Positions 1 through 53,519 of a DNA stretch of 64,000 nt are shown piece after piece (position 1 is the stretch's first letter; every line of letters begins with the position of its first letter). The translations under genes and the position numbers were made by a program. The DNA comes from Octopus sinensis (Eukaryota). The notes under the pieces are model-generated. The model saw nothing but the letters and a program-made list of their open reading frames with translations, did no database searches and was not told the origin of the DNA. The DNA lies in contig NC_042999.1 of the NCBI RefSeq assembly GCF_006345805.1, positions 86,118,001-86,182,000 of the forward strand, written 5' to 3'.

Positions 1-619
1 TAAAAACTAACGTATAAACATAAATTCGAAAGATAAACCTATAGCAAGAAAAAAAAGAACGAAATCAAACCTCAATAAACCTTCAGAAACTCAACTCACA
101 AAAGCTGAACCAGAATTAGACCAATGAAAATGAAGATGAGATAGTAAGTTCTATCAGTAGAAAGATGTGCGCTGGGAACCTTAAATATGACAATTGTATA
201 AATGATGTATTTGTGTTGTGTATGTTTATGTGCGTGTGAGTGTGTGCGTGCGCATGTATATTAGTGTGCATATGTACATGTGGAGTGTTTTATTTAAGAA
301 TTTAATAAGATAGACTATACACCCACGAAAGATCTCACAGTATAAAATTTAACGATAAGATGGTAGCAACGATAAAAAAATCCTCTATCTGTATCACATG
401 GACAGGGTGGAACCAGAAGCGAATATTAAAATCAACCGGATAAGTCAGTAATATATGTAACACATACATTAGTTGTATTAGAAGTGTGCTTCCTTACAGC
501 TTGATATAAGGATATATCTGAACCTATACAAACCTTACTGAAAAAAACGTGCAAAAAATATAAAAGATAAAATATAAGATCTCAATATCGTTTATGAAAT
601 AGATAGCAAAGAGACACAA

Positions 620-8292: not shown

Positions 8293-8845
8293 ATTACTTT
8301 TGGTGACAATGTACTTATTATCAGAAAAGAAGTGATTGGTTTTTTAATTTTTATAGTATGTAGTTTACGAATATAATTGGTGTAATCTAAAGTTGATTTA
8401 GTATGCTTCGCAAAATCTTTCCTAGGTTTTATGTCTTAAATAAGAATTAAGACGAAGAATTGAAAGATTCGTTAGAGCGTCAGACACAATAGTATTTGAA
8501 GAATTTGGCTCCTTAATTTTTGAGTTCAAATACCTCCGAGGTTAACTTTGCTTTTAATCATTTCAGGGTCAATAAAAGAAAATACCAGTCAAGTACTGAA
8601 GTCGATTTAATCGATTGATTACATTGATCATCCAGATTTCGTCTAACAATGACACTAAGGTTCAGAATTCAGAGTGAATTTCCTAAGGGAAAAGCGAATG
8701 AGGGTGTAAACTCCAATACCACATTGAGGAACCGTGGCTCCAAGCATTATTCGTTGAGAAAAGGTATAATGATAGAGCAATGTCATACTAACCTAAAATT
8801 ACTTGGAAATGTGGCGCGTCCATCATCGTGCGTGGAGCAAGTTAA

Positions 8846-8936: not shown

Positions 8937-9140
8937 GTTATAGATGCATTAGGAACTATCCCTAAATATCTGAACAGATGGTTAGAGAAAATAGGCATAA
9001 GGCTCAGTTTAGTACAGCTGCAGAAAACAGTGTTATTAGGGACAGCTAGGATACTTAGGAAGGTTCTTGGCATCTAAGGTCACTTGTTGTAGCCCGATAG
9101 GAGGTTTCTTGGCGTCTAAGATTACCTGTTGTAGCCCGAT
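8934..9140 (+). mobile_element. Extreme 3' end of an R4/Dong-like LINE with a duplicated terminal ~40 bp
   Basis: IVIDALGTIPKYLNRWLEKIGIRLSLVQLQKTVLLGTARILRKVLGI* (stop 9075-9077) is the typical C-terminus of RLE-clade ORFs. Confidence 0.85.
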
Positions 9141-9146
9141 GTTAGG

Positions 9147-9293
9147 GTTCTGAGTTCAAATTCCGCCGAAGTCGACTTTGCCTTTCATCCATTCAGAACC
9201 GATAAAATAAATACCAGTTGAGCACTGGAATTGATGTAATCAACTGACCACCTCCTCCAAAATTACTGGCCTGTGCCAAAATTTGAAACCAAT
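9147..9293 (+). mobile_element. SINE family B, 5'-truncated, plus orientation
   Basis: gttctgagttcaaattccgccgaagtcgactttgcctttcatcc...ggcctgtgccaaaatttgaaacc. Confidence 0.85.
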
Positions 9294-11492: not shown

Positions 11493-12753
11493 CATACATA
11501 TTTTAATACCCCACAACATATACATACCAACATACATACATACATACATACATACTACATACATACATACATACATACATACATACATACATACATACAA
11601 ACTCCTGTATATTCATAACAACATGCAGATAAATACACATACAAAACTGGAGCATTTCCCATCCTTACATCTGAAAGTCAGGAATCATGGCTAGTAATGA
11701 AATAATTTGTGGCTTTCATGCATGAGCTATTACTACTCAATTGAAGCATGTCAATATTAAAACTACTCTAAGAAGTACAAAATAATTATCAGTTATCTAA
11801 TATCTGAGTGAATCACACATTATAACATACCTCGTTTCATTACTTCATTTTAGCATTATAATGTATCTCGGCTCTGAATCTAACGCTTTCAAAACAAGGG
11901 TTATCACCGTAATCACCCCTATCATAACTATGTAGTTGATCGTATTGCTACTATTAATATCTAACTATTAATATTACAGTAAATCTATAACAAATTATGC
12001 TGCTGAAATTATACACACAGACTCAGACACGCAGACACACACATACACGCATTGCATCATATAAAGGTATTATATCCATTTAAAATAACCACATACTGTT
12101 ATATTAACTTTTCATTATAATTTCATTATAATGATATTAGTATTAGATATCTCAGTTTTTCATCATTCGTATACGACCCGGATGTGGTACTTCATTGCAT
12201 GTTAAAGTTATGGTAACCTGATTTATTAACAACAGTATAAACTTAAACGTTAGTGATGCCGGTGGTATATGATTATCATTACATGTGTACAAGTAGAAGG
12301 TATTTGATTACAGGAGAAAATCTTAAGTAGGACTTAATGAAATCGCAAAATTTCTTTGCAGTTTTCGACAATCCAGTATTTGAAAGATACTTCATTAATT
12401 ACAAGCTCCACATCACCAAAGATACCATTTCAAAAATCTTTCACATATTTCCTAGATATAAAGCCTTTGATATGTTAAAAGGTTTAAATGAAAACCTGTA
12501 ATTATATAGAATGAATATTTTAAACAGTTGGAGTACATTTCACAAAAAATATACATTTCTTAATTCGCATTGCAAAGTTATATCGAAAAATTTCCTTTCG
12601 GGATTCCTTACAGTTCTTAATCCACTTTTTCACTTAGAACCCTATATTTGATAATTATAATCTGCTTGATTAGTGCAGAGAAATACAGAAACCCGTAATT
12701 GGGTTGGAGTTAACATTGATTAAAAATATGAGATAATGATAGATTTTACTCAC

Positions 12754-13004
12754 CAAGTTCCAAAACAGGACCAAACACTGTTTCATCACCGACTATGCTA
12801 CAATTCCATCGGCGATTTCGGAACTGATATTGGCACTCCCTGATTCCTAACTGAGCTCCACGACCAACACTTGGCATGTGGTCGTAATGTGTTTGACATA
12901 TTTGAATTTGGCCAACAGACAAACCTTTGAGACCAACACACATCGGGCGTGCTCCAAGCATGTACATCTTCCGCCATACCTCTCCACTCTGTAATCCCAA
13001 GTTC
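12754..13004 (-). CDS. Wnt5: Internal coding exon of a Wnt5-subfamily ligand (251 nt, phase 2 in, phase 1 out)
   Basis: Acceptor ttttttag|G and donor G|gtgagt. Encodes NLGLQSGEVWRKMYMLGARPMCVGLKGLSVGQIQICQTHYDHMPSVGRGAQLGIRECQYQFRNRRWNCSIVGDETVFGPVLEL(G). It has the Wnt ECQxQFRxRRWNCS motif and the Wnt5-type YxxGAxPxCxxLxGLSxGQ..CxxxxDHM and VFGxV signatures. Subfamily assigned from recalled motifs, no alignment run. Confidence 0.92.
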
Positions 13005-13795
13005 CTAAAAAATGGATTAAACTATCGTTAGAAATATAAATGTTATAATAATTCGAAAGAAGTTGGAAATAAAGATTTCTATGGTAAAATAGATGAAAAA
13101 TTTTAATAGCAGTTAGATTCACCGAAAAACTGACTGCTTAGAGACAAACACAACTCCCATTAGATAAAGGAAAGAAACATTTTACAAAACATGCAAAATA
13201 TTGAAATTGTGGAGCTGTACTCATTCTCTAAATAATTATCAAGCGGTTAGTAATATTTTAAGCATATACATCTCTACTTCTATCTTTGCGCAAAAATTAA
13301 GCAGAGTAGTTCTTAATGTTTTATATTTTCATTTTCCGATCTTAACCATTGTGCGATATTTATACTTACAGCTTAGCGGTGTTTAACACACACATTATAA
13401 AGATAAATGAACAAACAATTACGTTTATTCCATTATATGTGATAAATTTCTGCTATTTTAGTAAGACATTTGAGTAAGACATTTTATCATTTATCGATAT
13501 ATAAGGGAAAGATAATCAGTGAAGGGGTAACGGAAATGAAGGATGTAATATAATTGATTTTTTTTTTTATAGCTGTTTTTAAAAACTTGCACACCGCATT
13601 CAGTTCTATATCAGATATTGGCACCAAGTAAAACATATTTTATATTCTTTACAATTTATATATATATATGTACAGCAAAATTTAGATTCAGATGAATATA
13701 GTACTTAAGTTAAAGGCACCAGAATTTGGTATGGTATTATCCATATAAATCAAATGGGGTGATTGGATATCCTTGTTGCTTATTTTGAGTATATA

Positions 13796-31486: not shown

Positions 31487-32320
31487 TCAGGTCATCACAT
31501 AAGTTCTGTCTGATTTTACCTTTTTTAAAATTGAATGAAATTTAATAGTATTTTAGAATGTCTAATGGAATTAAAAATTATTTATATACATTTAAACTAA
31601 TTAAATATTATTTTACAGAATAATAGAATTAAAATTTCTTTGATTAAAACCCTTTCTAACATGGAAGTATCCAAAGAGCATTTGAGGCACATGAGTACAA
31701 AAAAGGAAATTCTGCAGCCGAAGCGACTCGAAACATACACTCAGTTTATGGGAAAGAATGCTTGAATGAAAGAACTTGCAGAAGATGGTTTGCAAAATTC
31801 AGAAGTGGAGATTTCAGCCTTGAAGATGAAGATCGAACAGGACGTCCAGTTGAGTTTGATGATAAGCTCCTTGAGGCATTACTTGAAGAAAATCCTCCAT
31901 TATCAGTTGAAGAATTGGCAATAAAGCTTAGTTCAAACCATACGACTGTTCATCGTCATCTTCAACAACTTGGAAAGGTTCCTAAACTTGGAAAATGGGT
32001 GCCTCATGAATTGTCCGAAAGCAGCCGCAAATCCCGAGTTGGCATCTGCTCTTCTCTCCATTCCCGCGAACCCATTTCACCCTTTTTGGATAGACTTGTG
32101 ACTGGTGACGAAAAATGGATCTTCTATCGAAATGTTGAACGTCGAAAACAGTGGTTTGGTAAAGGGAAAAGGCTCAACCACAACCGAGAAGGGAACTTCA
32201 TGGGGAAAATGTTCTTTTCTCTATCTGATGGGATTGCAAAGGAGTAATTCACTTTGAATTGTTACCACCTAATGCAACAATTAATACTGTCAGCAATTAG
32301 AGCATTTGAACCAAAACATT
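31487..32320 (+). pseudogene. 3'-truncated mariner (Mos1/Hsmar-like) transposase pseudogene
   Basis: TA followed by a putative left TIR tcaggtcatcacataagttctg. ATG at 31661 (MEVSKEHLRH) is followed by a frameshift. HTH motifs ERTCRRWFAKFRSGDFSLEDEDRTGRP, WVPHEL and the first catalytic block LVTGDEKW are present. Similarity ends ~32320. Confidence 0.92.
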
Positions 32321-32591: not shown

Positions 32592-33454
32592 ACGTTGACT
32601 TGTGTACCAGAAAATATGGCACACGCAAAAGGAAGAGTAAAAAAAGCCTTGTGAGTGGATTTGGTAGACGGATTTCGAAAGTACTAAGCAGTGTTAATAG
32701 GCATAAGCAAAATTTAGGTCATTTGAAATATGTTTGCGATGTGTGTGTGTCTTTCTGTCTGTGTTTGTCCCCCACCATCGCTTGACAACAGATACTGGTG
32801 CATTTACGTCTCCGTGGTATGGAGGTTCGGCAAAGGAGATCGATAGAGTAATTACCGGGCTTTAAAAAATGAATTCTGGGGTCGATACATTCGACTAAAA
32901 TTAAAAGGTGGTGCCCCAGCATGGCAGCTGTCAAATGACTGAAACAAATAAACGATAAAGATAAAAGATCGTCAACAAATTACATATAGAGAGAGCGAGG
33001 GGAGGGAGAGAGAATGAGTGTGTGAAAGAAAGAGAAAGATATAAAGAGAGTTAATCCATTCAAATTGTTTAATGTTCCTGGCTTAAGACCAAAGCAGAAA
33101 CTTGAACTAGAATAATAAAAGATCAAAGTGTACACGCGGAGAAATGCAGTAAGAAAGAGGTTAATGGCAGTAAACATCAAAATATATTGAGAAAGTATAC
33201 TAAAGTAATATGAATTTCGATTGGGTTATGCCCCAATACTTCCAAACGGGCAGAGAAAATATAAGATTAGTAGTACAGTGAACTTGACATCTAGTGATAA
33301 TAGAGCAGATGTGTAGTCTAAGCACGTTTATAGAAAATGATTAAGAAATCTAGAATGAACTGGTAACGTTGAGATCCTGAGATTTCGGAATAACAATAGC
33401 AAAGTATTTCTTTTTACATATATTAGTCTCTTTTAATGATATTAATTATTATTT

Positions 33455-33663
33455 CTATCGCAGGCACAAAGCCTGAAGTTGTGGAATGGAGGCAAGTCGT
33501 TTATATCGACTACCTGCACTCAATTGACACTTGTTCTATTGACCCCAAAAGGGTGAAAGTCTATATCGGCATCGGCAGAATCTGAACTCAAAACATAAAG
33601 GCAGGCGAAATGCTGCTAAGCATTTTCCCCGTTGTGCTAACGATTCTGCCAGCTCGCTAACTT
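33455..33663 (-). mobile_element. SINE family B
   Basis: caggcacaaagcctgaag...tgctaacgattctgccagctcgc. Confidence 0.85.
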
Positions 33664-33667
33664 AAAA

Positions 33668-33992
33668 AAAGAAACCTTTCTACTAAAGGAACAAGGCCTG
33701 AGATTTTGGGGGAGGAGACTAGTTGATTACATCAACCCCAGTGTTAACTGGTACTTATTTAATCCGTCTCGAAAAATTCCACCAAAGTCGACTATGCTTT
33801 TCATCTTTTCGAGACGGATTAAATAAGTACCAGTTAACACTGGGGTTGATGTAATCAACTAGTCTCCTCCCCCCAAATCTCAGGCCTTGTTCCTTTAGTA
33901 GAAAGGTTTCTTTGAACTCAGAATATAAAGGCAGACGAAATACTGCAAAGTAGTTTACTCATCGTGCTAACGAAACTGCCAGCTTACTACCT
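33668..33992 (-). mobile_element. SINE family B containing a 108-bp inverted duplication (palindrome)
   Basis: Arms 33668-33775 and 33806-33913 match at 107/108; 30-nt spacer; normal SINE sequence resumes at ~33911. Confidence 0.93.
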
Positions 33993-34039
33993 TAAAAAAA
34001 AAAAAAAATTGCGGTAATTATAATAAAGAGTTTGAAGAG

Positions 34040-34620
34040 AAATCTTTACAAAGTCACTTTTGGAAAGCCACTGTGGCTGCATGCGGAACAAAATCTGGGC
34101 TTGGTTGAAAAAGGGACAACTGTAAAAAGAAACAGAGAACCTTATTATAGCAGAACAAGATCAAACACTGCAAATAGGCAACTTGAGAAAATATGGGGAG
34201 AAGATATCGGTAAAATGTAGAGTAGGTGGAATTTGGGATGAAATAATGACACATTGTTACCGAATGCCTCAAGTTGGCCACGGAAGAATATAAGAAATGT
34301 AAAACTGATCAAGCTGTGATAGTTTTACTCTTGAAACGTTGGCAAAAATGGGAGTTTGAAGTAGCAATTACATAGTACAATCAGCTGATACTAAGAATAC
34401 TTGATTCAGAAACGTGCACATTTATGGGATTTTCCTATTGAAATGGATAAGATGGAACATAACGAACCAGATATCACAAGGAAAATCGAATTTGCTTACT
34501 GAATAATCCATGATATCCACATGATACAAGGACTATAAAGAAAGCAAGTGAAAAGTTGAAAGACTATCAGCCCTTAAAATGTGAGATTGCGCGGGTTTGG
34601 AACATGAATTCTGTAAAATT
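34040..34620 (+). mobile_element. Decayed 3' fragment of an R4/Dong-like LINE, interrupted by a SINE
   Basis: WLKKGQLxKETENLIIAEQDQTL, LWDFPIE, HNEPDI and KLKDYQPLKCEIARVW; resumes after 34960. Confidence 0.8.
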
Positions 34621-34949
34621 GAAAAAAAGACTCCGCCGGTTACGACGACGAGGGTCCCAGCTGATACGATCAACGGAACAGCTTGCTCGTGAAATTAACG
34701 TGCAAATGGCTGAGCATTCCACAGACACGTGTACCCTTAACGTAGTTCTCGGTGATAATCAGCGTGACACAGAGAGTGACAAGGCTGACCCTTTGAAATA
34801 CAAGTACAACTCATTTTTGCCAGCTGAGTGGACTGGAGCAACGTGAAATAAAGTGTCTTGCTCAAGGACACAACGCGTCGCCGGGAATCGAACTCACAAC
34901 CTTACGATCATGAGCCGAATGCCCTAACCACTAAGCCACGCGCTCTCAC
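34621..34949 (-). mobile_element. Full-length SINE family C with an 11-bp target-site duplication
   Basis: TSD TCTGTAAAATT at 34610-34620 and 34950-34960. A-box tggcttagtgg and B-box gagttcgattcc on the minus strand. Confidence 0.93.
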
Positions 34950-41400: not shown

Positions 41401-42136
41401 AAATATCACATCGGTTAAAGCATAGAATCAGTAGACTAAAAAGTGAAGCAGTGAATTACATTGTGAGTGCAGTACACAAGCACGAATGAAATATAACACT
41501 GCCAGGATTGTGTACCGAAAGTTATGCAAGAAACAAGCTCCACAGAAAAGAGAATTGGTGTGTGCTTGTCTCAGTCGTAGACTGATGTGAAGCAACTTTA
41601 GGACTTCAACTTTCACTGTGATCACGAAATATTATATGAGACAAGACTTGCTATTGAATTGTTGAAAGATAAAACATGTACTATTGGATAAATGATTATC
41701 AACACCCGGACATAACAGGGTAAGTGAAAAGGAAAAGATTGAGTAGTATCAAAATTTGAGGAGAGAAACTGCTTTTTTGTGCAGACTGGTGAAATTGATG
41801 CCGTTTAATGTTCCGTTTAAACTGTTGCAGGCCAACATTTGCAGGAAAGCCATGAGTAGGGAAATGATTTCGGTGGGAAGACGATCTAGAGAGGAAGGAC
41901 TGAGCATAATGTTTAGAGGTGTAGGGGTTGGGACACAATAAAAGTTATGAGAGGTGGAGACACAAATAGATCGGGGTGACTGAATAGGTAAGGTGCGAGA
42001 TCAGAGAGGTGATGTTAACTGATAGAATGAAAAGGTAAAGTTCCCGGAAACAGAAGACAATGACGCGAGCAGAACATTTTATACAGAAATTGTTTTCACT
42101 GTACTGAAAAGTATCGTGATCAGAAATCGTTTCAGT

Positions 42137-42830
42137 GGCTGAAAATGGGAATATTGAAAAAAGAGACTGTGGGATTGATTGTAGATGCACAGGAACAAGC
42201 CGTCACAAATAATATAAATAAAGAAAACGTCTCGGCTGTATATAGAATGTGTGGTGAAAAGAAGAGATGGTTACATATGAAAAATGCTTCTCAGAGAATG
42301 AATAACTGGAAACAAGGTAAAGTTGTCACTATCATACACTTGCAAGTCTGCATAAACTTTGAATTCGAACATGTACTAAAAATGGTATGACCATATAACA
42401 GAACATGTTCTTGAAACGGATATGCAAAGGTACTATGAGATATGGAAATTCAACTGGATAGGCAAGTAGAATATTCACACCTACATATAATCATACTCAA
42501 GAAACAGGACAGAATTTGTTGCTTAATTAATGTTGTTTACTTGTTTCATACAAGAGTAGAAGAATAGAACGTGAGAAAATAAAATACTAGGAACTAAAAT
42601 TTGAACTCCAGTGAGTCTGGAATTGTAGTAAAGTTATCATTAACCTAACTGTAATAGGAGCCTTAGAAACTGTTGCAAGAGGTTTGAATGGCTGGCTGAA
42701 AACACGGAGATGAATTTCCTTATACCACAGAAAGCCTGTTTAGGACTATAAGGATGGTACTAGATACCTAAGGTTGAGGGATGCAACTTAATATCTAGTT
42801 ATCTAATACCATGAAAAATCAGAAACAAAA
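42137..42830 (+). mobile_element. Decayed 3' fragment of an R4/Dong-like LINE
   Basis: WLKMGILKKETVGLIVDAQEQAV, YRMCGE and VIGALETV. Confidence 0.8.
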
Positions 42831-48719: not shown

Positions 48720-49054
48720 CGGTCGGTCGGGACCCCCTTCGGTCACGACACTGACCATGGGATTGCACCTAGAAAGTTACCCTCCTAGTCACAAGTCTGG
48801 GCAAGGTGGTTTATGGAAGACCAGCAGTCACCCATGCATACCGGCCTCCCCTCTCCACGCCACCAGTGTTATCCAAGGGAAAGGCAAAGGCCGATACAGC
48901 TTGGCACTTGTGACGTCGCAACTCATTTCTACAGCTGAGTTAACTGGAGCAACGTGAAATAAAGTGTCTTGCTCAAGAACACAACACGCAGCCCGGTCCG
49001 GGATTCGAGCTCACAACCTCACGATCGTAAGCTCGACGCTCTAACCACTGAGCC

Positions 49055-49055
<1 letters not shown>
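48720..49055 (-). mobile_element. SINE family D, near full length (duplicated at 49894-50229)
   Basis: Minus-strand head tggctcagtggttagagcg...gagctcgaatcc; tail ccatggtcagtgtcgtgaccgaagggggtc; inserted in (ATT)n. Confidence 0.9.
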
Positions 49056-49096
<41 letters not shown>

Positions 49097-49129
49097 GTAA
49101 TAATAATAATGATAATAATAATAATAATG

Positions 49130-49175
<46 letters not shown>

Positions 49176-49339
49176 GTTTTTCAAGTGCTTAAGACCCCAC
49201 CCCAAGATTTTCTTAAGCACTTGAAAGATTATTGAAAGCTTGTGGATAGCTAAGGTTACAGGTAGTAACCTGCAACCCACATAAATTCTACCAAAAATAA
49301 GAATGAACCTGAGTCAAATCCATAATAATGATGATGATG

Positions 49340-49384
<45 letters not shown>

Positions 49385-50228
49385 TACTTTTCACACCTTA
49401 AAGGAAAAGTTATGTGGTACTCATATGAACCTATAATTATCAGGGAATATAACAATGTGAACTAGTATACAGACAAGCCATCAGAGAACACACAATAAGT
49501 CTGAAGTAATTTTCAGTGGCAAAAATAATAATAGTGTGCTAATAATGCATACTGCAATACCGAATGATTATAATGTGAGCTTAGTTAAGGAGCTACACAG
49601 AGTAGCTATCAAATTAAATACATTATAGCAGTGAAGCAGTTGTCAGTCATTCCATATATAATTTGTACAACTGCAATAATAAACAATTTCTTCTATAAAG
49701 ACGTCGACAAGTTAACTATGAAGATAGACAGAGCAAGTTCTAGAAGAGACGAGATGTAGTTAATAAAGTGCATTTTGTTAAATCTTGAATACTTGGTTTA
49801 TTTTTCCCAGATATACTTTAATTTTGGTGTAGGAATGAAATACTGATGTATTTCTCAAATTATGAATAACAAATAACAAATAATAATAATAATCGGTCGG
49901 TCGGGACCCCCTTCGGTCACGACACTGACCATGGGATTGCACCTAGAAAGTTACCCTCCTAGTCACAAGTCTGGGCAAGGTGGTTTATGGAAGACCAGCA
50001 GTCACCCATGCATACCGGCCTCCCCTCTCCACGCCACCAGTGTTATCCAAGGGAAAGGCAAAGGCCGATACAGCTTGGCACTTGTGACGTCGCAACTCAT
50101 TTCTACAGCTGAGTTAACTGGAGCAACGTGAAATAAAGTGTCTTGCTCAAGAACACAACACGCAGCCCGGTCCGGGATTCGAGCTCACAACCTCACGATC
50201 GTAAGCTCGACGCTCTAACCACTGAGCC

Positions 50229-50270
<42 letters not shown>

Positions 50271-50303
50271 GTAATAATAATAATGATAATAATAATAATA
50301 ATG

Positions 50304-50349
<46 letters not shown>

Positions 50350-50525
50350 GTTTTTCAAGTGCTTAAGACCCCACCCCAAGATTTTCTTAAGCACTTGAAA
50401 GATTATTGAAAGCTTGTGGATAGCTAAGGTTACAGGTAGTAACCTGCAACCCACATAAATTCTACCAAAAATAAGAATGAACCTGAGTCAAATCCATAAT
50501 AATGATGATGATGATAATAATAATA

Positions 50526-51147: not shown

Positions 51148-51387
51148 TTCGTTTTGGGATTTGGTTTGCAAGATTCTTTATATGGGTTCGTGTGTTGAAG
51201 CATATTCTGTTGTGTCTGGGGAGAGTCATTTTCTTTTTGTGCCTTATAATGTAACACACTCACCGGTAAAATTTCCGCTTATTTCTTATTAAAAAATAAA
51301 AGTAAGAAATAAGTGAAAATTTTACTGGTGAGTGTGTTACATTATAAGGCACAAAAAGAAATGACTCCCGCCAGAAACAACAGAATA
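51148..51387. mobile_element. Foldback/palindromic element, ~88-bp arms around a 10-nt loop
   Basis: 51203-51290 against the reverse complement of 51301-51387 shows about 8 differences; flanked by AAT tracts. Confidence 0.8.
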
Positions 51388-51877
51388 ATAATAATAGTTG
51401 TATGTAACACAAGCACATGACCTGCAGTTTGGCGGGAGAGGATTGGTTGATTATATTACTGTTAGATTTTAACTTGTACTTTATTCCATTGGCCCCGAAA
51501 ATAATTAAAATCATAGACGACTTTGGAGGGATCTTAATTACGTACATAAAAAAACGAACCCCGCACCCCGAAAAAATAGGTATTTTCTCGACGATCTACC
51601 CTGTTAATCCACCTCCATTTATAATAGTAGAAATTACAGTAATAGTAGTTTAGAAACAATGACTTTTTTTTCTAAAACGGGCAGAAAACTATACATTTTA
51701 GTGAAGAATATATTCTATCAAGTGATCCTTGTATTTGACTGAATTATTTTTTATAAACTCTTGACGCATAGAGAGGCGCAGTCGAACCCATCTTTATTTG
51801 AATTAAGAACGTAAGAGGACATAAGTAAATACTACAACATTTTGTTTGATGCTTTTCCTAATTTGAAACCCTATGCA

Positions 51878-51947
<70 letters not shown>
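51878..51947. repeat. (ACT)n microsatellite
   Basis: Seen directly. Confidence 0.95.
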
Positions 51948-52697
51948 AAGGAACATTAAAAGAAGAGACCGAGAGCATTATACTGGCAGTGCAAGACCAA
52001 GCTATAGCCACGAACCTTTGGAATGAGCAAGTGTCTCCGCTGTGTCGTATCTGTAATAGAGTGGATGAAACCCTTGCCCATATCACAAACGAATGCCCTA
52101 GTCTTGCCCAAAATAACTACAAGTTATGGCAACAGGATTAAGTAGCGAAAGTGCTACATTGGAAACTGTGCGAAAAGTGGGTGCTAGAGAGAGGCAAGAC
52201 GCGGTATGAGCACAAACAGCAGAGATTGGCGGAGTCGGAGACTAGCAAAATCCTCTGGGATTTCCCAATCCAAACAGATCAGGTGTTAGAGCATAACAGA
52301 CCGGACTTAGTGGTGGTCGACAAGATGCACCACATGTGCTTTATAGTTGATGTTGCATGCCACTTTGACCCACGAGTAGTGAAGAAGGAAGGCGAAACAA
52401 CAAAATACAACCCTCTTAAGTATGAAATAGTCCGGCTATAGAAAATAAAGAAAGTGAAGATTGTGCCAATTATTGTTGGGTCCTTGGGGACAGTATCAGA
52501 AGGCATCAAAAGGAATATAAAGGAGATTGGAATAAAGCGTCCAGTAGAACTGTTACAAAAGGTTTGCCTCCTTTGCACGGTCAGAATAACCAGGAAAGTA
52601 TTAGATAGTTGAAAAGAACAGACAGCATGGTACCGTAGGCTGCAGGTAGCAAATTACTACGTAAGACTCCAGGAGTTCCAACAAAATCCATGATAAA
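51948..52697 (+). mobile_element. 5'-truncated R4/Dong-like LINE (CCHC knuckle plus RLE nuclease)
   Basis: CRICNRVDETLAHITNEC; KILWDFPIQTDQVLEHNRPDLVVVDK...IVDVAC; VPIIVGSLG; stop ~52612. Confidence 0.92.
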
Positions 52698-52745
52698 AAT
52701 AAATAATAATAACAACAACAACACAACAACAACAACAACAACAAC

Positions 52746-52784
<39 letters not shown>

Positions 52785-53519
52785 TGGAGGGTCTAATCTG
52801 CGCTACCCAAGAGCAAGCACTAAGAACGAATTGCATCAAATACAGAATAGAAAACGCATTAGGAAGTTATAAGTGCAGAATTTGTGGACAAAATGGTGAA
52901 ACCGTATGGCATATTACCAGTCAATGTACGCCAATAGCCCAGAAAGAATATAAGAGACGTCATGACAATATAGCAACAATTGTTCATTGGACACCTTGCA
53001 ACAAGTATGGACTTGATAGAGCAAAAAAGTGGTACGAACATAAACCCGAAGGCATTATCAAAAATGATAATACAAAGATCCTATGGGATTTTATGATTCA
53101 GTGCGACCATGAAATAGAGAATAGGAAACCAGGCAGTGTTAATTGAGAAAGAAAGCAAACGATGGTAGATCATAGATATATCATGCCCAGCTGACTACAA
53201 GGTATGCCATAAGGAAGAAAGAAAAGTCGATAGATTTGACAAGTTAGCTTCGGAGGTTAAGAAGTTGCGGTCGATGAAAAAGGTGGTAGTAGTACCAATA
53301 ATTGTCGGAGCTCTGGAAACAAGGGATAAAAAATTTGAGAAGTACATGCAACAAATTGGGGCTGCAATAAGGATGGAGCACTTTCTGAAAACAACACAGC
53401 TTGGAACCGCTTGGATACTCCGTATGGTGCTTGAAAAATAAAGGCTGTTACCTTAGTTCACTGGTAGTGAACAGTTGGTACCGTAGCACATCTCCAGCGT
53501 TAGAAGCTGTGCAAAGACA
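52785..53519 (+). mobile_element. Second, different-family 5'-truncated R4/Dong-like LINE
   Basis: EGLICATQEQALRTN, CRICGQNGETVWHITSQC, KILWDFMIQCDHEIENRKP and VVPIIVGALE; (AAT)n on both sides. Confidence 0.92.

What the first reader, a model, noticed from the sequence alone, without database searches (positions are those of the whole stretch)
33668..33913. 108-bp near-perfect hairpin that decomposes exactly as a template-switch event inside a SINE
Seen: arm L 33668-33775, 30-nt spacer, arm 33806-33913 = revcomp(L) with one mismatch. The spacer's reverse complement (gatgaaaagcatagtcgactttggtggaat) is the SINE segment that should join L to the sequence resuming at tttgaactcag. So parent L-M-R became L-rc(M)-rc(L)-R, with 3-nt microhomologies (aaa, ttt) at both switch points. 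Known: this is the four-point template-switch model of local inverted duplication. Inference: a very recent event creating a ~108-bp duplex in the presumed Wnt5 pre-mRNA, a possible ADAR or Dicer substrate in a lineage with heavy A-to-I editing, and a cruciform-prone site.
Basis: partly seen in the sequence, partly recalled or inferred. Interest (0 to 1): 0.7.

Follow-up and report, generated by a model that had tools for sequence, protein, structure and literature searches.

The report
Template-switch hairpin inside a SINE-like repeat
A 246-base near-perfect hairpin in non-coding DNA upstream of a Wnt5-like exon is best explained as one replication copying error (the polymerase briefly copied the opposite strand) inside a short interspersed repeat: a clean, unusually large example of a known mutation type, with no function shown.

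Summary
Arms 33668-33775 and 33806-33913 (108 nt each) are complementary except for one pair (33707/33874) and are separated by 30 nt. It is the only long, complex-sequence, near-perfect inverted repeat in the window.

The decomposition also holds. About 19 loci of a roughly 215-bp SINE-like repeat lie in the window. Against a profile built from eight other copies, L + reverse-complemented spacer + R aligns full length without gaps (160.5 bits). Leaving the spacer unflipped gives 129.6 bits. The flipped spacer matches the family consensus at 25/30 positions, the unflipped at 5/30.

One switch-and-return event of the published four-point model (type 3-1-2-4) reproduces the sequence with one mismatch. 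Junction microhomologies are 2 nt (AA) and 3 nt (TTT). The copied fragment is 138 nt, longer than the longest great-ape event in the cited set (128 nt).

Independent SINE insertions, twin priming, a MITE and a fold-back chimera all fit worse.

Not shown: read support, an observed ancestral allele, the organism, transcription, and any ADAR or Dicer processing. The only Wnt exon in the window (Wnt5a-like, minus strand, 12754-13004) lies 20.7 kb away, so intronic location is only hinted.

Verdict: a real feature and a new member of a known kind, of modest interest.

The parts
33451..33669 (+). Upstream full-length copy of the SINE-like repeat. Its A-rich tail (AAAAAAAGAAACC) runs into arm L. This is context: it supplies the 9 non-SINE bases at the outer end of both arms.
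   Evidence: nhmmer profile hit covering hmm 2-220, 194 bits; alignment.
33668..33775 (+). Arm L. It comprises 9 nt of the neighbouring copy's tail or target site (AAAGAAACC) plus the first ~100 nt of the second SINE-like copy, in native orientation and with a native left junction. It is the end of fragment F1 in the four-point model.
   Evidence: profile hit on the + strand from hmm 2; alignment.
33774..33775 (+). First switch junction (points 1 to 2). These 2 nt (AA) could have come from either template, so they count as microhomology.
   Evidence: Enumeration of four-point solutions: point 1 = L positions 106-108, point 2 = positions 140-138.
33776..33805 (-). Spacer, which is the reverse complement of SINE segment M (GATGAAAAGCATAGTCGACTTTGGTGGAAT), the piece that joins L to R in intact copies.
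   Evidence: Flipped, it matches the family consensus at 25/30 positions; as it stands, at 5/30. None of 100000 shuffles reached 25 (maximum 19). Scores are 160.5 bits flipped, 129.6 unflipped and 119.9 with M absent.
33806..33913 (-). Arm 2, the reverse complement of L, including the 9 non-SINE bases. Together with the spacer it forms the 138-nt ectopically copied fragment F2 (33776-33913).
   Evidence: one continuous minus-strand profile hit covering hmm 2-134 across 33905-33774.
33874..33874 (.). The only arm mismatch (partner base 33707). Arm L keeps the T found in 7 of 8 other family copies, so the changed base lies in the copied fragment.
33911..33913 (+). Return junction (points 3 to 4). 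These 3 nt (TTT) are shared between the end of rc(L) and the parental GGAATTTGAAC.
   Evidence: four equivalent placements; profile positions 132-134 are covered by both the minus-strand and the plus-strand hit.
33914..34010 (+). R, the 3' ~85 nt of the SINE-like copy in native orientation, followed by an A15 tail. This is fragment F3.
   Evidence: Profile hit covering hmm 132-218 at 33911-33997; 82% identical to the 3' part of the upstream copy (D1).
12754..13004 (-). Wnt5a-like coding exon with acceptor tttttag|G and donor G|gtgagt. It is the only Wnt exon in the window and lies 20.7 kb downstream of the hairpin in gene orientation. This is context for the 'Wnt5 pre-mRNA' claim.
   Evidence: Pfam wnt E = 1.5e-16; best PDB sequence hit is Wnt-5a at 90 bits, against Wnt-3a at 67 bits; relatives align only across 12747-13006.

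Best explanation
The hairpin is the scar of a single replication-associated, inter-strand template switch inside one copy of a ~215-bp SINE-like repeat. It corresponds to type 3-1-2-4 of the four-point model (mirror case 1-3-4-2).

Proposed sequence of events:
1. A nascent strand copied through the 5' part of the repeat (L) and stopped in an A run.
2. It re-annealed 30 nt ahead on the complementary template, at the TTT of GGAATTTGAAC.
3. It copied backwards for 138 nt, through M, L and 9 nt of the neighbouring repeat's A-rich tail.
4. It let go with TTT at its 3' end and returned to the original template at the same TTT, then continued through R.

Parent L-M-R thus became L-rc(M)-rc(L)-R, a gain of 108 nt.

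Shown: the anatomy, its collinearity with the repeat family, and the fact that one switch-and-return event suffices. Inferred: that the event occurred in vivo in the germ line, that it is recent, and which enzymes were involved (fork stalling, MMBIR-like restart or lesion bypass).

The element most likely has no function. If it is transcribed by RNA polymerase II it would form a ~108-bp duplex, and as DNA it is predicted to be an unstable, cruciform-prone palindrome.
For: - Near-perfect 108-nt arms with a 30-nt spacer.
- The reconstructed L + rc(spacer) + R aligns without gaps across both junctions to eight other copies. It scores 160.5 bits over profile positions 2-219, against 129.6 bits with the spacer unflipped and 119.9 bits without it.
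- In the real sequence, profile positions 2-134 are contiguous on the minus strand (33905-33774) and positions 132-218 resume on the plus strand at 33911.
- The flipped spacer matches the consensus at 25/30 positions, the unflipped at 5/30. None of 100000 shuffles reached 25.
- The arms are 99% identical, whereas L is 70.5% identical to other copies. Both arms also include 9 nt lying outside the conserved repeat body. The inverted copy was therefore made from this locus.
- A single four-point event reproduces the sequence with one mismatch, with 2-nt and 3-nt junction microhomologies in A/T runs.
[quoted passage not shown] Enrichment of poly(dA:dT) near switch points is reported in PMC7954356.
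- The arrangement is unique among ~19 family loci in the window.
Against: - No ancestral or outgroup allele was observed. The parent is inferred from paralogous copies, so the four-point fit is partly circular.
- No reads could be examined, so an assembly or library artefact is not excluded.
- The one mismatch sits at a homopolymer boundary and could be a sequencing or polishing error rather than a post-event substitution.
- At 138 nt the copied fragment exceeds the largest event (128 nt) in the great-ape gold-standard set, whose median is 12 nt.
- The number of T's in the parent at the M/R boundary, and hence the exact microhomology, is assumed from the family consensus.
Confidence: 0.8

Rival explanations
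1. It is an assembly or library artefact: a polymerase template switch in vitro (for example during amplification), or a chimeric fold-back read that entered the consensus. On this view the genome itself carries plain L-M-R.
For: No reads could be checked. No other assembly or contig of this locus was reachable. The single mismatch lies at a homopolymer boundary, a typical site of sequencing error. In-vitro strand switching leaves the same junction signature as the in-vivo process (general knowledge).
Against: Fold-back chimeras from missed adapters give X-rc(X) running to the end of the read, with no return. Here the sequence returns to the parental track after exactly 138 nt, inside an otherwise continuous 64-kb window with no N. 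2-3 nt of homology is too little to mislead a k-mer or overlap assembler. An in-vitro chimera would also have to dominate coverage at this locus.
Confidence: 0.08
2. It arose in several steps at the DNA level, for example an inversion of L-M plus a separate duplication of L, or break repair with insertion of an inverted sister-chromatid fragment. It would then not be one switch-and-return event.
For: Any complex rearrangement can in principle be built from simpler ones. Break-induced fold-back and templated inverted insertions are documented in yeast (titles and abstracts of PMC11724301 and PMC10622511).
Against: It needs two or more events whose end points coincide to the base with the collinear L/M and M/R boundaries. 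Simple fold-back priming at a break leaves the spacer in its original orientation and does not rejoin R, which contradicts the inverted spacer.
Confidence: 0.05
3. It arose by retrotransposition. Either rc(M)-rc(L)-R-poly(A) is a twin-primed insertion (inverted 5' part, direct 3' part) that landed next to an unrelated SINE fragment L, or two SINE copies inserted head to head.
For: 33776-34010 on its own has the twin-priming layout: profile positions 134-2 inverted, then 132-218 direct, then A15. SINE-like copies in this window often sit next to each other.
Against: - The arms are 99% identical, against about 70% between family members.
- The inverted arm includes 9 nt outside the conserved repeat body that match this locus's own flank, which an RNA-derived copy would not carry.
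- L would have to be a 3'-truncated fragment ending exactly where M begins, with no gap or overlap.
- Target-primed insertion truncates elements at the 5' end, not the 3' end (general knowledge).
Confidence: 0.03
4. It is a mobile palindromic element (MITE-like) or a conserved hairpin RNA gene (miRNA-like) that happens to lie here.
For: Long plant miRNA-precursor models give sub-threshold Rfam matches: MIR2646 at 105 bits and MIR2670 at 93 bits.
Against: Both scores are below the gathering thresholds (245 and 117 bits) and merely reflect any long perfect stem. The matches occur on both strands. The arms are SINE sequence collinear with the flanking R, so removing the hairpin does not restore an intact host sequence. 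There is no second copy in the window.
Confidence: 0.02

Closest known systems
Short-range template-switch mutations, four-point model type 3-1-2-4 / 1-3-4-2 (Loytynoja & Goldman 2017, PMC5453318; Walker et al. 2021, PMC7954356)
   Same: The output is F1 + the reverse complement of a nearby parental fragment + F3. [quoted passage not shown] Point 4 does not precede point 1. The switch points lie in A/T runs. A perfect hairpin is created in one step.
   Different: The copied fragment is 138 nt and the arms are 108 nt. The great-ape gold-standard set has a median of 12 nt and a maximum of 128 nt. The ancestral state is inferred here from paralogous repeat copies rather than from an orthologous outgroup. 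The event lies inside a repeat, a class of sequence that those scans masked.
Template-switch origin of RNA hairpins and de novo miRNA genes (Monttinen & Loytynoja 2022, PMC8794818; Monttinen et al. 2023, PMC10710096)
   Same: A single event makes a fully paired stem-loop from previously unstructured sequence. If the locus lies in an existing transcription unit, the hairpin would be transcribed without needing its own promoter.
   Different: Those candidates were restricted to stems of 30-55 nt, the size of miRNA precursors. A 108-bp perfect duplex is closer to a long-hairpin or endo-siRNA precursor, or to an ADAR hyper-editing substrate. No expression or processing evidence exists here.
Quasipalindrome correction by strand switching in bacteria (Ripley 1982; Dutra & Lovett 2006, as summarised in PMC5453318)
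   Same: An inter-strand switch at a fork can invert the spacer and produce perfect inverted repeats.
   Different: The classic model needs a pre-existing imperfect inverted repeat. The inferred parent L-M-R has none at this scale, and only 2-3 nt microhomologies are present.
Closely spaced inverted Alu/SINE pairs (fragile sites and major ADAR substrates in primates; general knowledge)
   Same: The end product is two SINE-derived arms in inverted orientation 30 nt apart, predicted to form long dsRNA and hairpin or cruciform DNA.
   Different: Those pairs arise from two independent insertions and are diverged. Here the arms are a local duplication of one copy, 99% identical, and cover only the 5' half of the element.
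L1/SINE twin-priming inversions (Ostertag & Kazazian 2001; general knowledge)
   Same: An inverted 5' part is joined to a direct 3' part plus an A tail.
   Different: An additional direct copy of the inverted part is present. The inverted part also carries local flanking bases. Both are incompatible with copying from one RNA.

Membership tests
Template-switch mutation, four-point model type 3-1-2-4 / 1-3-4-2 | The derived sequence equals parent[..1] + reverse complement of parent[3..2] + parent[4..], produced by one switch and one return. | tested here: met
   exact reproduction with one mismatch, for parents carrying 1-4 T at the M/R boundary. The caveat is that the parent is itself reconstructed.
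Template-switch mutation, four-point model type 3-1-2-4 / 1-3-4-2 | The order of points along the reference is 3 < 1 < 2 <= 4. Point 4 does not precede point 1, and point 2 lies after point 1, so the spacer is inverted and the switch is inter-strand. | tested here: met
   point 3 = L positions 1-4, point 1 = 106-108, point 2 = 138-140, point 4 = 138-141. Definition taken from PMC5453318.
Template-switch mutation, four-point model type 3-1-2-4 / 1-3-4-2 | The donor template lies close by, at the same locus. | tested here: met
   The copied fragment is 99% identical to the adjacent L, against about 70% to other copies. It also includes 9 nt of local flank.
Template-switch mutation, four-point model type 3-1-2-4 / 1-3-4-2 | The ancestral (pre-event) orthologous sequence is observed in an outgroup or in another individual. 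| not testable with these tools
   No other assembly, read set or contig of this locus was found. The parent is supported only by the paralogue profile.
SINE (short interspersed retroelement) | A short (<500 bp), non-coding, dispersed multi-copy repeat. | tested here: met
   22 profile hits at about 19 loci in 64 kb; about 215 bp at full length; L, M and R are 65-74% identical (pooled) to eight other copies.
SINE (short interspersed retroelement) | An A-rich or simple-repeat 3' tail. | tested here: met
   A15 at 33996-34010, A7GA3 at 33664-33674, and (TAA)n tails on other copies.
SINE (short interspersed retroelement) | A head derived from a pol III gene (tRNA, 5S or 7SL) with an internal promoter. 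| tested here: inconclusive
   ARAGORN found no tRNA. Rfam gave no gathering-level hit in the window and no tRNA-like hit at E <= 10 on two copies. Diverged heads can escape these tools.
SINE (short interspersed retroelement) | Target-site duplications flanking individual copies. | not tested
   Not examined.
miRNA precursor families MIR2646 / MIR2670 (Rfam) | A score at or above the family's gathering threshold. | tested here: not met
   105 bits against a threshold of 245, and 93 bits against 117. Matches occur on both strands, the generic behaviour of a long stem.
Twin-priming retrotransposition inversion | Each part of the element is present once (inverted 5' part, direct 3' part), copied from RNA and therefore without flanking genomic bases. 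| tested here: not met
   L is present in both orientations. The inverted copy carries the 9-nt local flank GGTTTCTTT.
MITE / palindromic mobile element | Multiple copies of the whole palindromic unit, and an intact host sequence once the unit is removed. | tested here: not met
   The unit is single-copy in the window. Removing it leaves only the 3' 40% of a SINE.
Fold-back chimeric read / assembly artefact | A palindrome with no return to the parental track, unsupported by spanning reads. | tested here: inconclusive
   The sequence returns to R after 138 nt and continues for 30 kb, which argues against an artefact. Read support cannot be tested here.

The most novel reading that the evidence does not exclude
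The hairpin is a newborn, polymerase II-transcribed long-hairpin RNA inside a Wnt5 intron, created in one step by a template switch in a SINE. On this reading it is already processed into endo-siRNAs or miRNA-like RNAs, or hyper-edited by ADAR, and so feeds back on SINE-containing transcripts or on Wnt5 pre-mRNA handling. That would be a caught-in-the-act case of regulatory RNA birth outside primates and rodents.
Probability: 0.05. Interest if true: 0.55.

Novelty: new member of a known kind. Interest (0 to 1): 0.3.

Why it matters
This is a clear single-locus illustration that one replication template switch can turn ordinary repeat DNA into a 108-bp perfect hairpin. It sits at or beyond the upper size limit reported for short-range template switches in great apes.

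Because the parent can be reconstructed from the repeat family alone, repeats could serve as internal references for detecting such events in genomes that lack close outgroups. Published scans masked these regions.

In practical terms, the locus is a likely polymorphic structural variant (108 bp longer or shorter). It is also a predicted fragile palindrome and a candidate long-dsRNA source near a developmental gene. None of these consequences has been shown.

Tried and rejected
1. Looking for the same locus elsewhere. Exact-product look-ups of five window ORFs next to or inside the hairpin found nothing: 34556-34846, 31762-32247, both 43-aa hairpin ORFs, and 34054-34281. Two scans of the metagenome contigs also found nothing, one with the parental M/R junction and one with a locus-specific 38-mer from L. 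A protein search with the Wnt exon returned only ORF fragments at 86% identity or less. Their contigs align to the window only within the exon, at 74% nucleotide identity. The species and its close relatives therefore appear to be absent from the collections, so I ran no further search on flanking ORFs.

2. Identifying the organism. A paper search for the run and assembly accessions of the nearest relatives returned nothing. The taxon remains unverified.

3. Finding the upstream Wnt exon. A scan of the minus strand for Met-started ORFs ending in TG|GT donors, with a hydrophobic stretch, gave no convincing candidate. No CKCHG-type downstream exon is present in the window either.

4. tRNA-like SINE head. 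ARAGORN and Rfam found none. By eye, the reverse complement of the 3' half has a weak B-box-like GAGTTCAAATTCC. I did not rely on it, and the A-rich tails support the + orientation.

5. Rfam miRNA matches. They are below threshold, occur on both strands, and were rejected as generic long-stem matches.

6. Rejected on anatomy: MITE, twin priming, independent inverted insertions, and simple fold-back repair (see rival explanations).

Full report
**Observation.** Two 108-nt arms (33668-33775 and 33806-33913) are complementary at 107 of 108 positions and are separated by a 30-nt spacer at 33776-33805. The only mismatch pairs 33707 (T) with 33874 (C), at the border of a T run and a G run. The arms cannot be extended.

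As RNA the region folds into one long stem at -210.3 kcal/mol, against -74.2 +/- 4.7 for dinucleotide shuffles (z = -28.7). As DNA it folds at -130.2 kcal/mol (z = -27.5). In a whole-window scan the other long inverted repeats are 71-82% complementary. They lie in stretches that the six-frame translations show to be microsatellite-rich. A scan for perfect inverted repeats of complex sequence returned only this structure and a 35-nt core near 51.2 kb. The feature is real in the sequence and far beyond chance.

**What the arms are made of.** The window holds a family of ~215-bp interspersed repeats with A-rich or (TAA)n tails. A profile built from eight copies finds 22 segments at about 19 loci. 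I call it SINE-like. Size, copy number and tail all fit a SINE, but no tRNA-like head was detected by ARAGORN or Rfam.

One full copy ends at 33669 with the tail AAAAAAAGAAACC. The hairpin starts inside that tail. Arm L therefore consists of 9 nt lying outside the conserved repeat body (AAAGAAACC) followed by the first ~100 nt of a second copy. After the hairpin, 33914-34010 is the 3' ~85 nt of a copy followed by A15.

- It is collinear. The reconstruction aligns to eight other copies without any gap at either junction.
- It scores best. Against a profile built without it, it scores 160.5 bits over profile positions 2-219. L + unflipped spacer + R scores 129.6 bits, and L + R scores 119.9 bits.
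- The spacer orientation is clear. The flipped spacer matches the family consensus at 25 of 30 positions, the spacer as it stands at 5 of 30. None of 100000 shuffles of M reached 25 (maximum 19).
- The real sequence shows the predicted breakpoints. Profile positions 2-134 form one continuous minus-strand match (33905-33774), and positions 132-218 resume on the plus strand at 33911. That is the expected pattern for L-rc(M)-rc(L)-R with a 3-nt overlap at the return.

**One event is enough.** I enumerated all switch-and-return solutions on the reconstructed parent. A single event reproduces the observed sequence with one mismatch:

1. Copy up to the end of L.
2. Jump to the complementary template at the M/R boundary.
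3. Copy backwards through M and L to the first bases of L.
4. Return to the M/R boundary.

With the family-consensus GGAATTTGAAC in the parent, the first junction can be placed at three equivalent positions, giving 2 nt of microhomology (AA, 33774-33775). The return can be placed at four positions, giving 3 nt (TTT, 33911-33913).

The point order 3 < 1 < 2 <= 4 corresponds to type 3-1-2-4 (mirror 1-3-4-2) of Loytynoja and Goldman. [quoted passage not shown] Spacer inversion implies an inter-strand switch rather than an intra-strand one (PMC5453318). All four switch points lie in A/T runs, in line with the poly(dA:dT) enrichment around switch points reported for great apes (PMC7954356).

The copied fragment is 33776-33913, 138 nt. 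In that great-ape set the median was 12 nt and the maximum 128 nt. This event is thus unusually large for the "short-range" class, though of the same kind.

**Why the rivals fit worse.**

- *Independent inverted SINE insertions.* They would differ as other family members do: L is 70.5% identical to the others (pooled), yet the arms are 99% identical to each other. Independent insertions also would not share 9 nt of local flank.
- *Twin priming.* It could give rc(M)-rc(L)-R-poly(A). It cannot explain the extra direct L that ends exactly where M begins, nor the flank bases in the inverted arm.
- *A MITE or hairpin RNA gene.* The arms are SINE sequence collinear with R. The unit is single-copy in the window. 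The Rfam matches to long plant miRNA precursors are below threshold and occur on both strands.
- *Simple fold-back priming at a break.* It would leave the spacer in its native orientation and would not rejoin R.
- *A fold-back chimeric read.* It would not return to the parental track after 138 nt. The window continues without N for another 30 kb.

An in-vitro polymerase switch that entered the consensus, or some other assembly error, cannot be excluded without reads. I give that about 8%.

**Age and polarity.** One difference in 108 paired positions, against about 30% divergence of L from other copies, shows the event is much younger than the repeat insertions. No absolute date can be given, and gene conversion between the arms could make the event look younger than it is. 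At the mismatch, arm L keeps the T seen in 7 of 8 other copies, so the change lies in the copied fragment. Three causes are possible: a later substitution, an error of the switching polymerase, or a base-calling error at a homopolymer edge.

**Context and the functional inference.** A Wnt exon lies on the minus strand at 12754-13004, with acceptor tttttag|G and donor G|gtgagt. It matches Pfam wnt (E = 1.5e-16). Among solved structures it is closest to Wnt-5a (90 bits, against 67 for Wnt-3a). "Wnt5-like" is therefore supported.

The hairpin lies 20.7 kb upstream of this exon in gene orientation. I could not find the upstream signal-peptide exon, and the later Wnt exons are outside the window. 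Whether 33.7 kb is intronic is therefore open.

One indirect hint comes from repeat orientation. Of the ~19 repeat loci, 17 are on the plus strand, antisense to the Wnt gene, and they lie on both sides of the exon. Such orientation bias is typical of retroelements inside transcription units. It could also reflect tandem insertion into each other's tails. This is inference.

A second inference concerns pol III. T4-5 runs occur in the spacer and at the inner arm ends on both strands. A pol III transcript starting in the SINE would probably stop before completing the hairpin, so only pol II read-through would make the duplex.

The organism could not be identified. The nearest public Wnt exon is 86% identical in protein and 74% in DNA, and it aligns only within the exon. 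The "heavy A-to-I editing lineage" premise, and the ADAR, Dicer and cruciform consequences, remain untested predictions.

**Verdict.** The structural interpretation, a single local inter-strand template switch inside a SINE-like repeat, is well supported (confidence about 0.8, conditional on the assembly being right). The functional reading is not supported by any data. The finding is a new, large and clean member of a known class of mutation rather than a new kind of element, and I score its interest at about 0.3.

Noticed in passing
window 51203-51387: A second long hairpin, about 185 nt and 87% self-complementary over 186 nt. The inner arms (51230-51288 / 51303-51361) are 95% complementary around a 14-nt loop, with a perfect 35-nt core. 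The RNA fold is -117.5 kcal/mol (z = -21.7). It is single-copy in the window and lies between a (TAA)n tract and a SINE-like copy. It could be an older inverted duplication of the same mechanistic kind, a MITE-like element or a hairpin RNA.
   Followed up: partly
window 3096-53781 (22 profile hits): There is a strong orientation bias in the SINE-like family: 17 of ~19 loci are on the + strand, antisense to the Wnt exon. Only 8459-8617 and 9140-9288 are on the - strand. Several copies sit in tandem, head to tail (3096/3260, 5841/5953, 33451/33676, 47646/47851, 51407/51668). This suggests insertion into earlier copies' A-rich tails, location inside a minus-strand transcription unit, or both.
   Followed up: partly
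window 12754-13004 (-): A Wnt5a-like coding exon of 251 nt (QYQFRNRRWNCS motif) with canonical splice sites. It is the only Wnt exon in the window. The nearest public relatives are ORF fragments at 86% amino-acid identity or less.
   Followed up: yes
window 31660-32244 (+): An open frame of 195 aa with the Mos1-type HTH_48 domain (E = 1.6e-17). It is a mariner/Mos1-like transposase remnant lying 1.4 kb from the hairpin.
   Followed up: partly
window ~49044-49313 and ~50218-50487: A local duplication with a spacing of about 1.17 kb. It shows identical 90-aa open frames and identical 16-nt inverted repeats at 49179/49211 and 50353/50385.
   Followed up: no
window 52142-53438 (+) and 42064-42387, 51815-52138 (+): Several open frames of 90-120 aa resemble each other (for example ...ILWDF.IQ.D...). 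By eye they look like fragments of a retroelement ORF, but none matched Pfam at E <= 0.01.
   Followed up: no
window-wide, e.g. 10.0-11.4, 16-23, 25.2-26.1, 30.0-30.6, 35.8-36.2 kb: The density of microsatellites and simple repeats is very high ((CA)n, (TA)n, (TAA)n, (CATA)n-like), and the window is 65.5% A+T. These repeats probably account for most of the other long, imperfect inverted repeats in the window.
   Followed up: no
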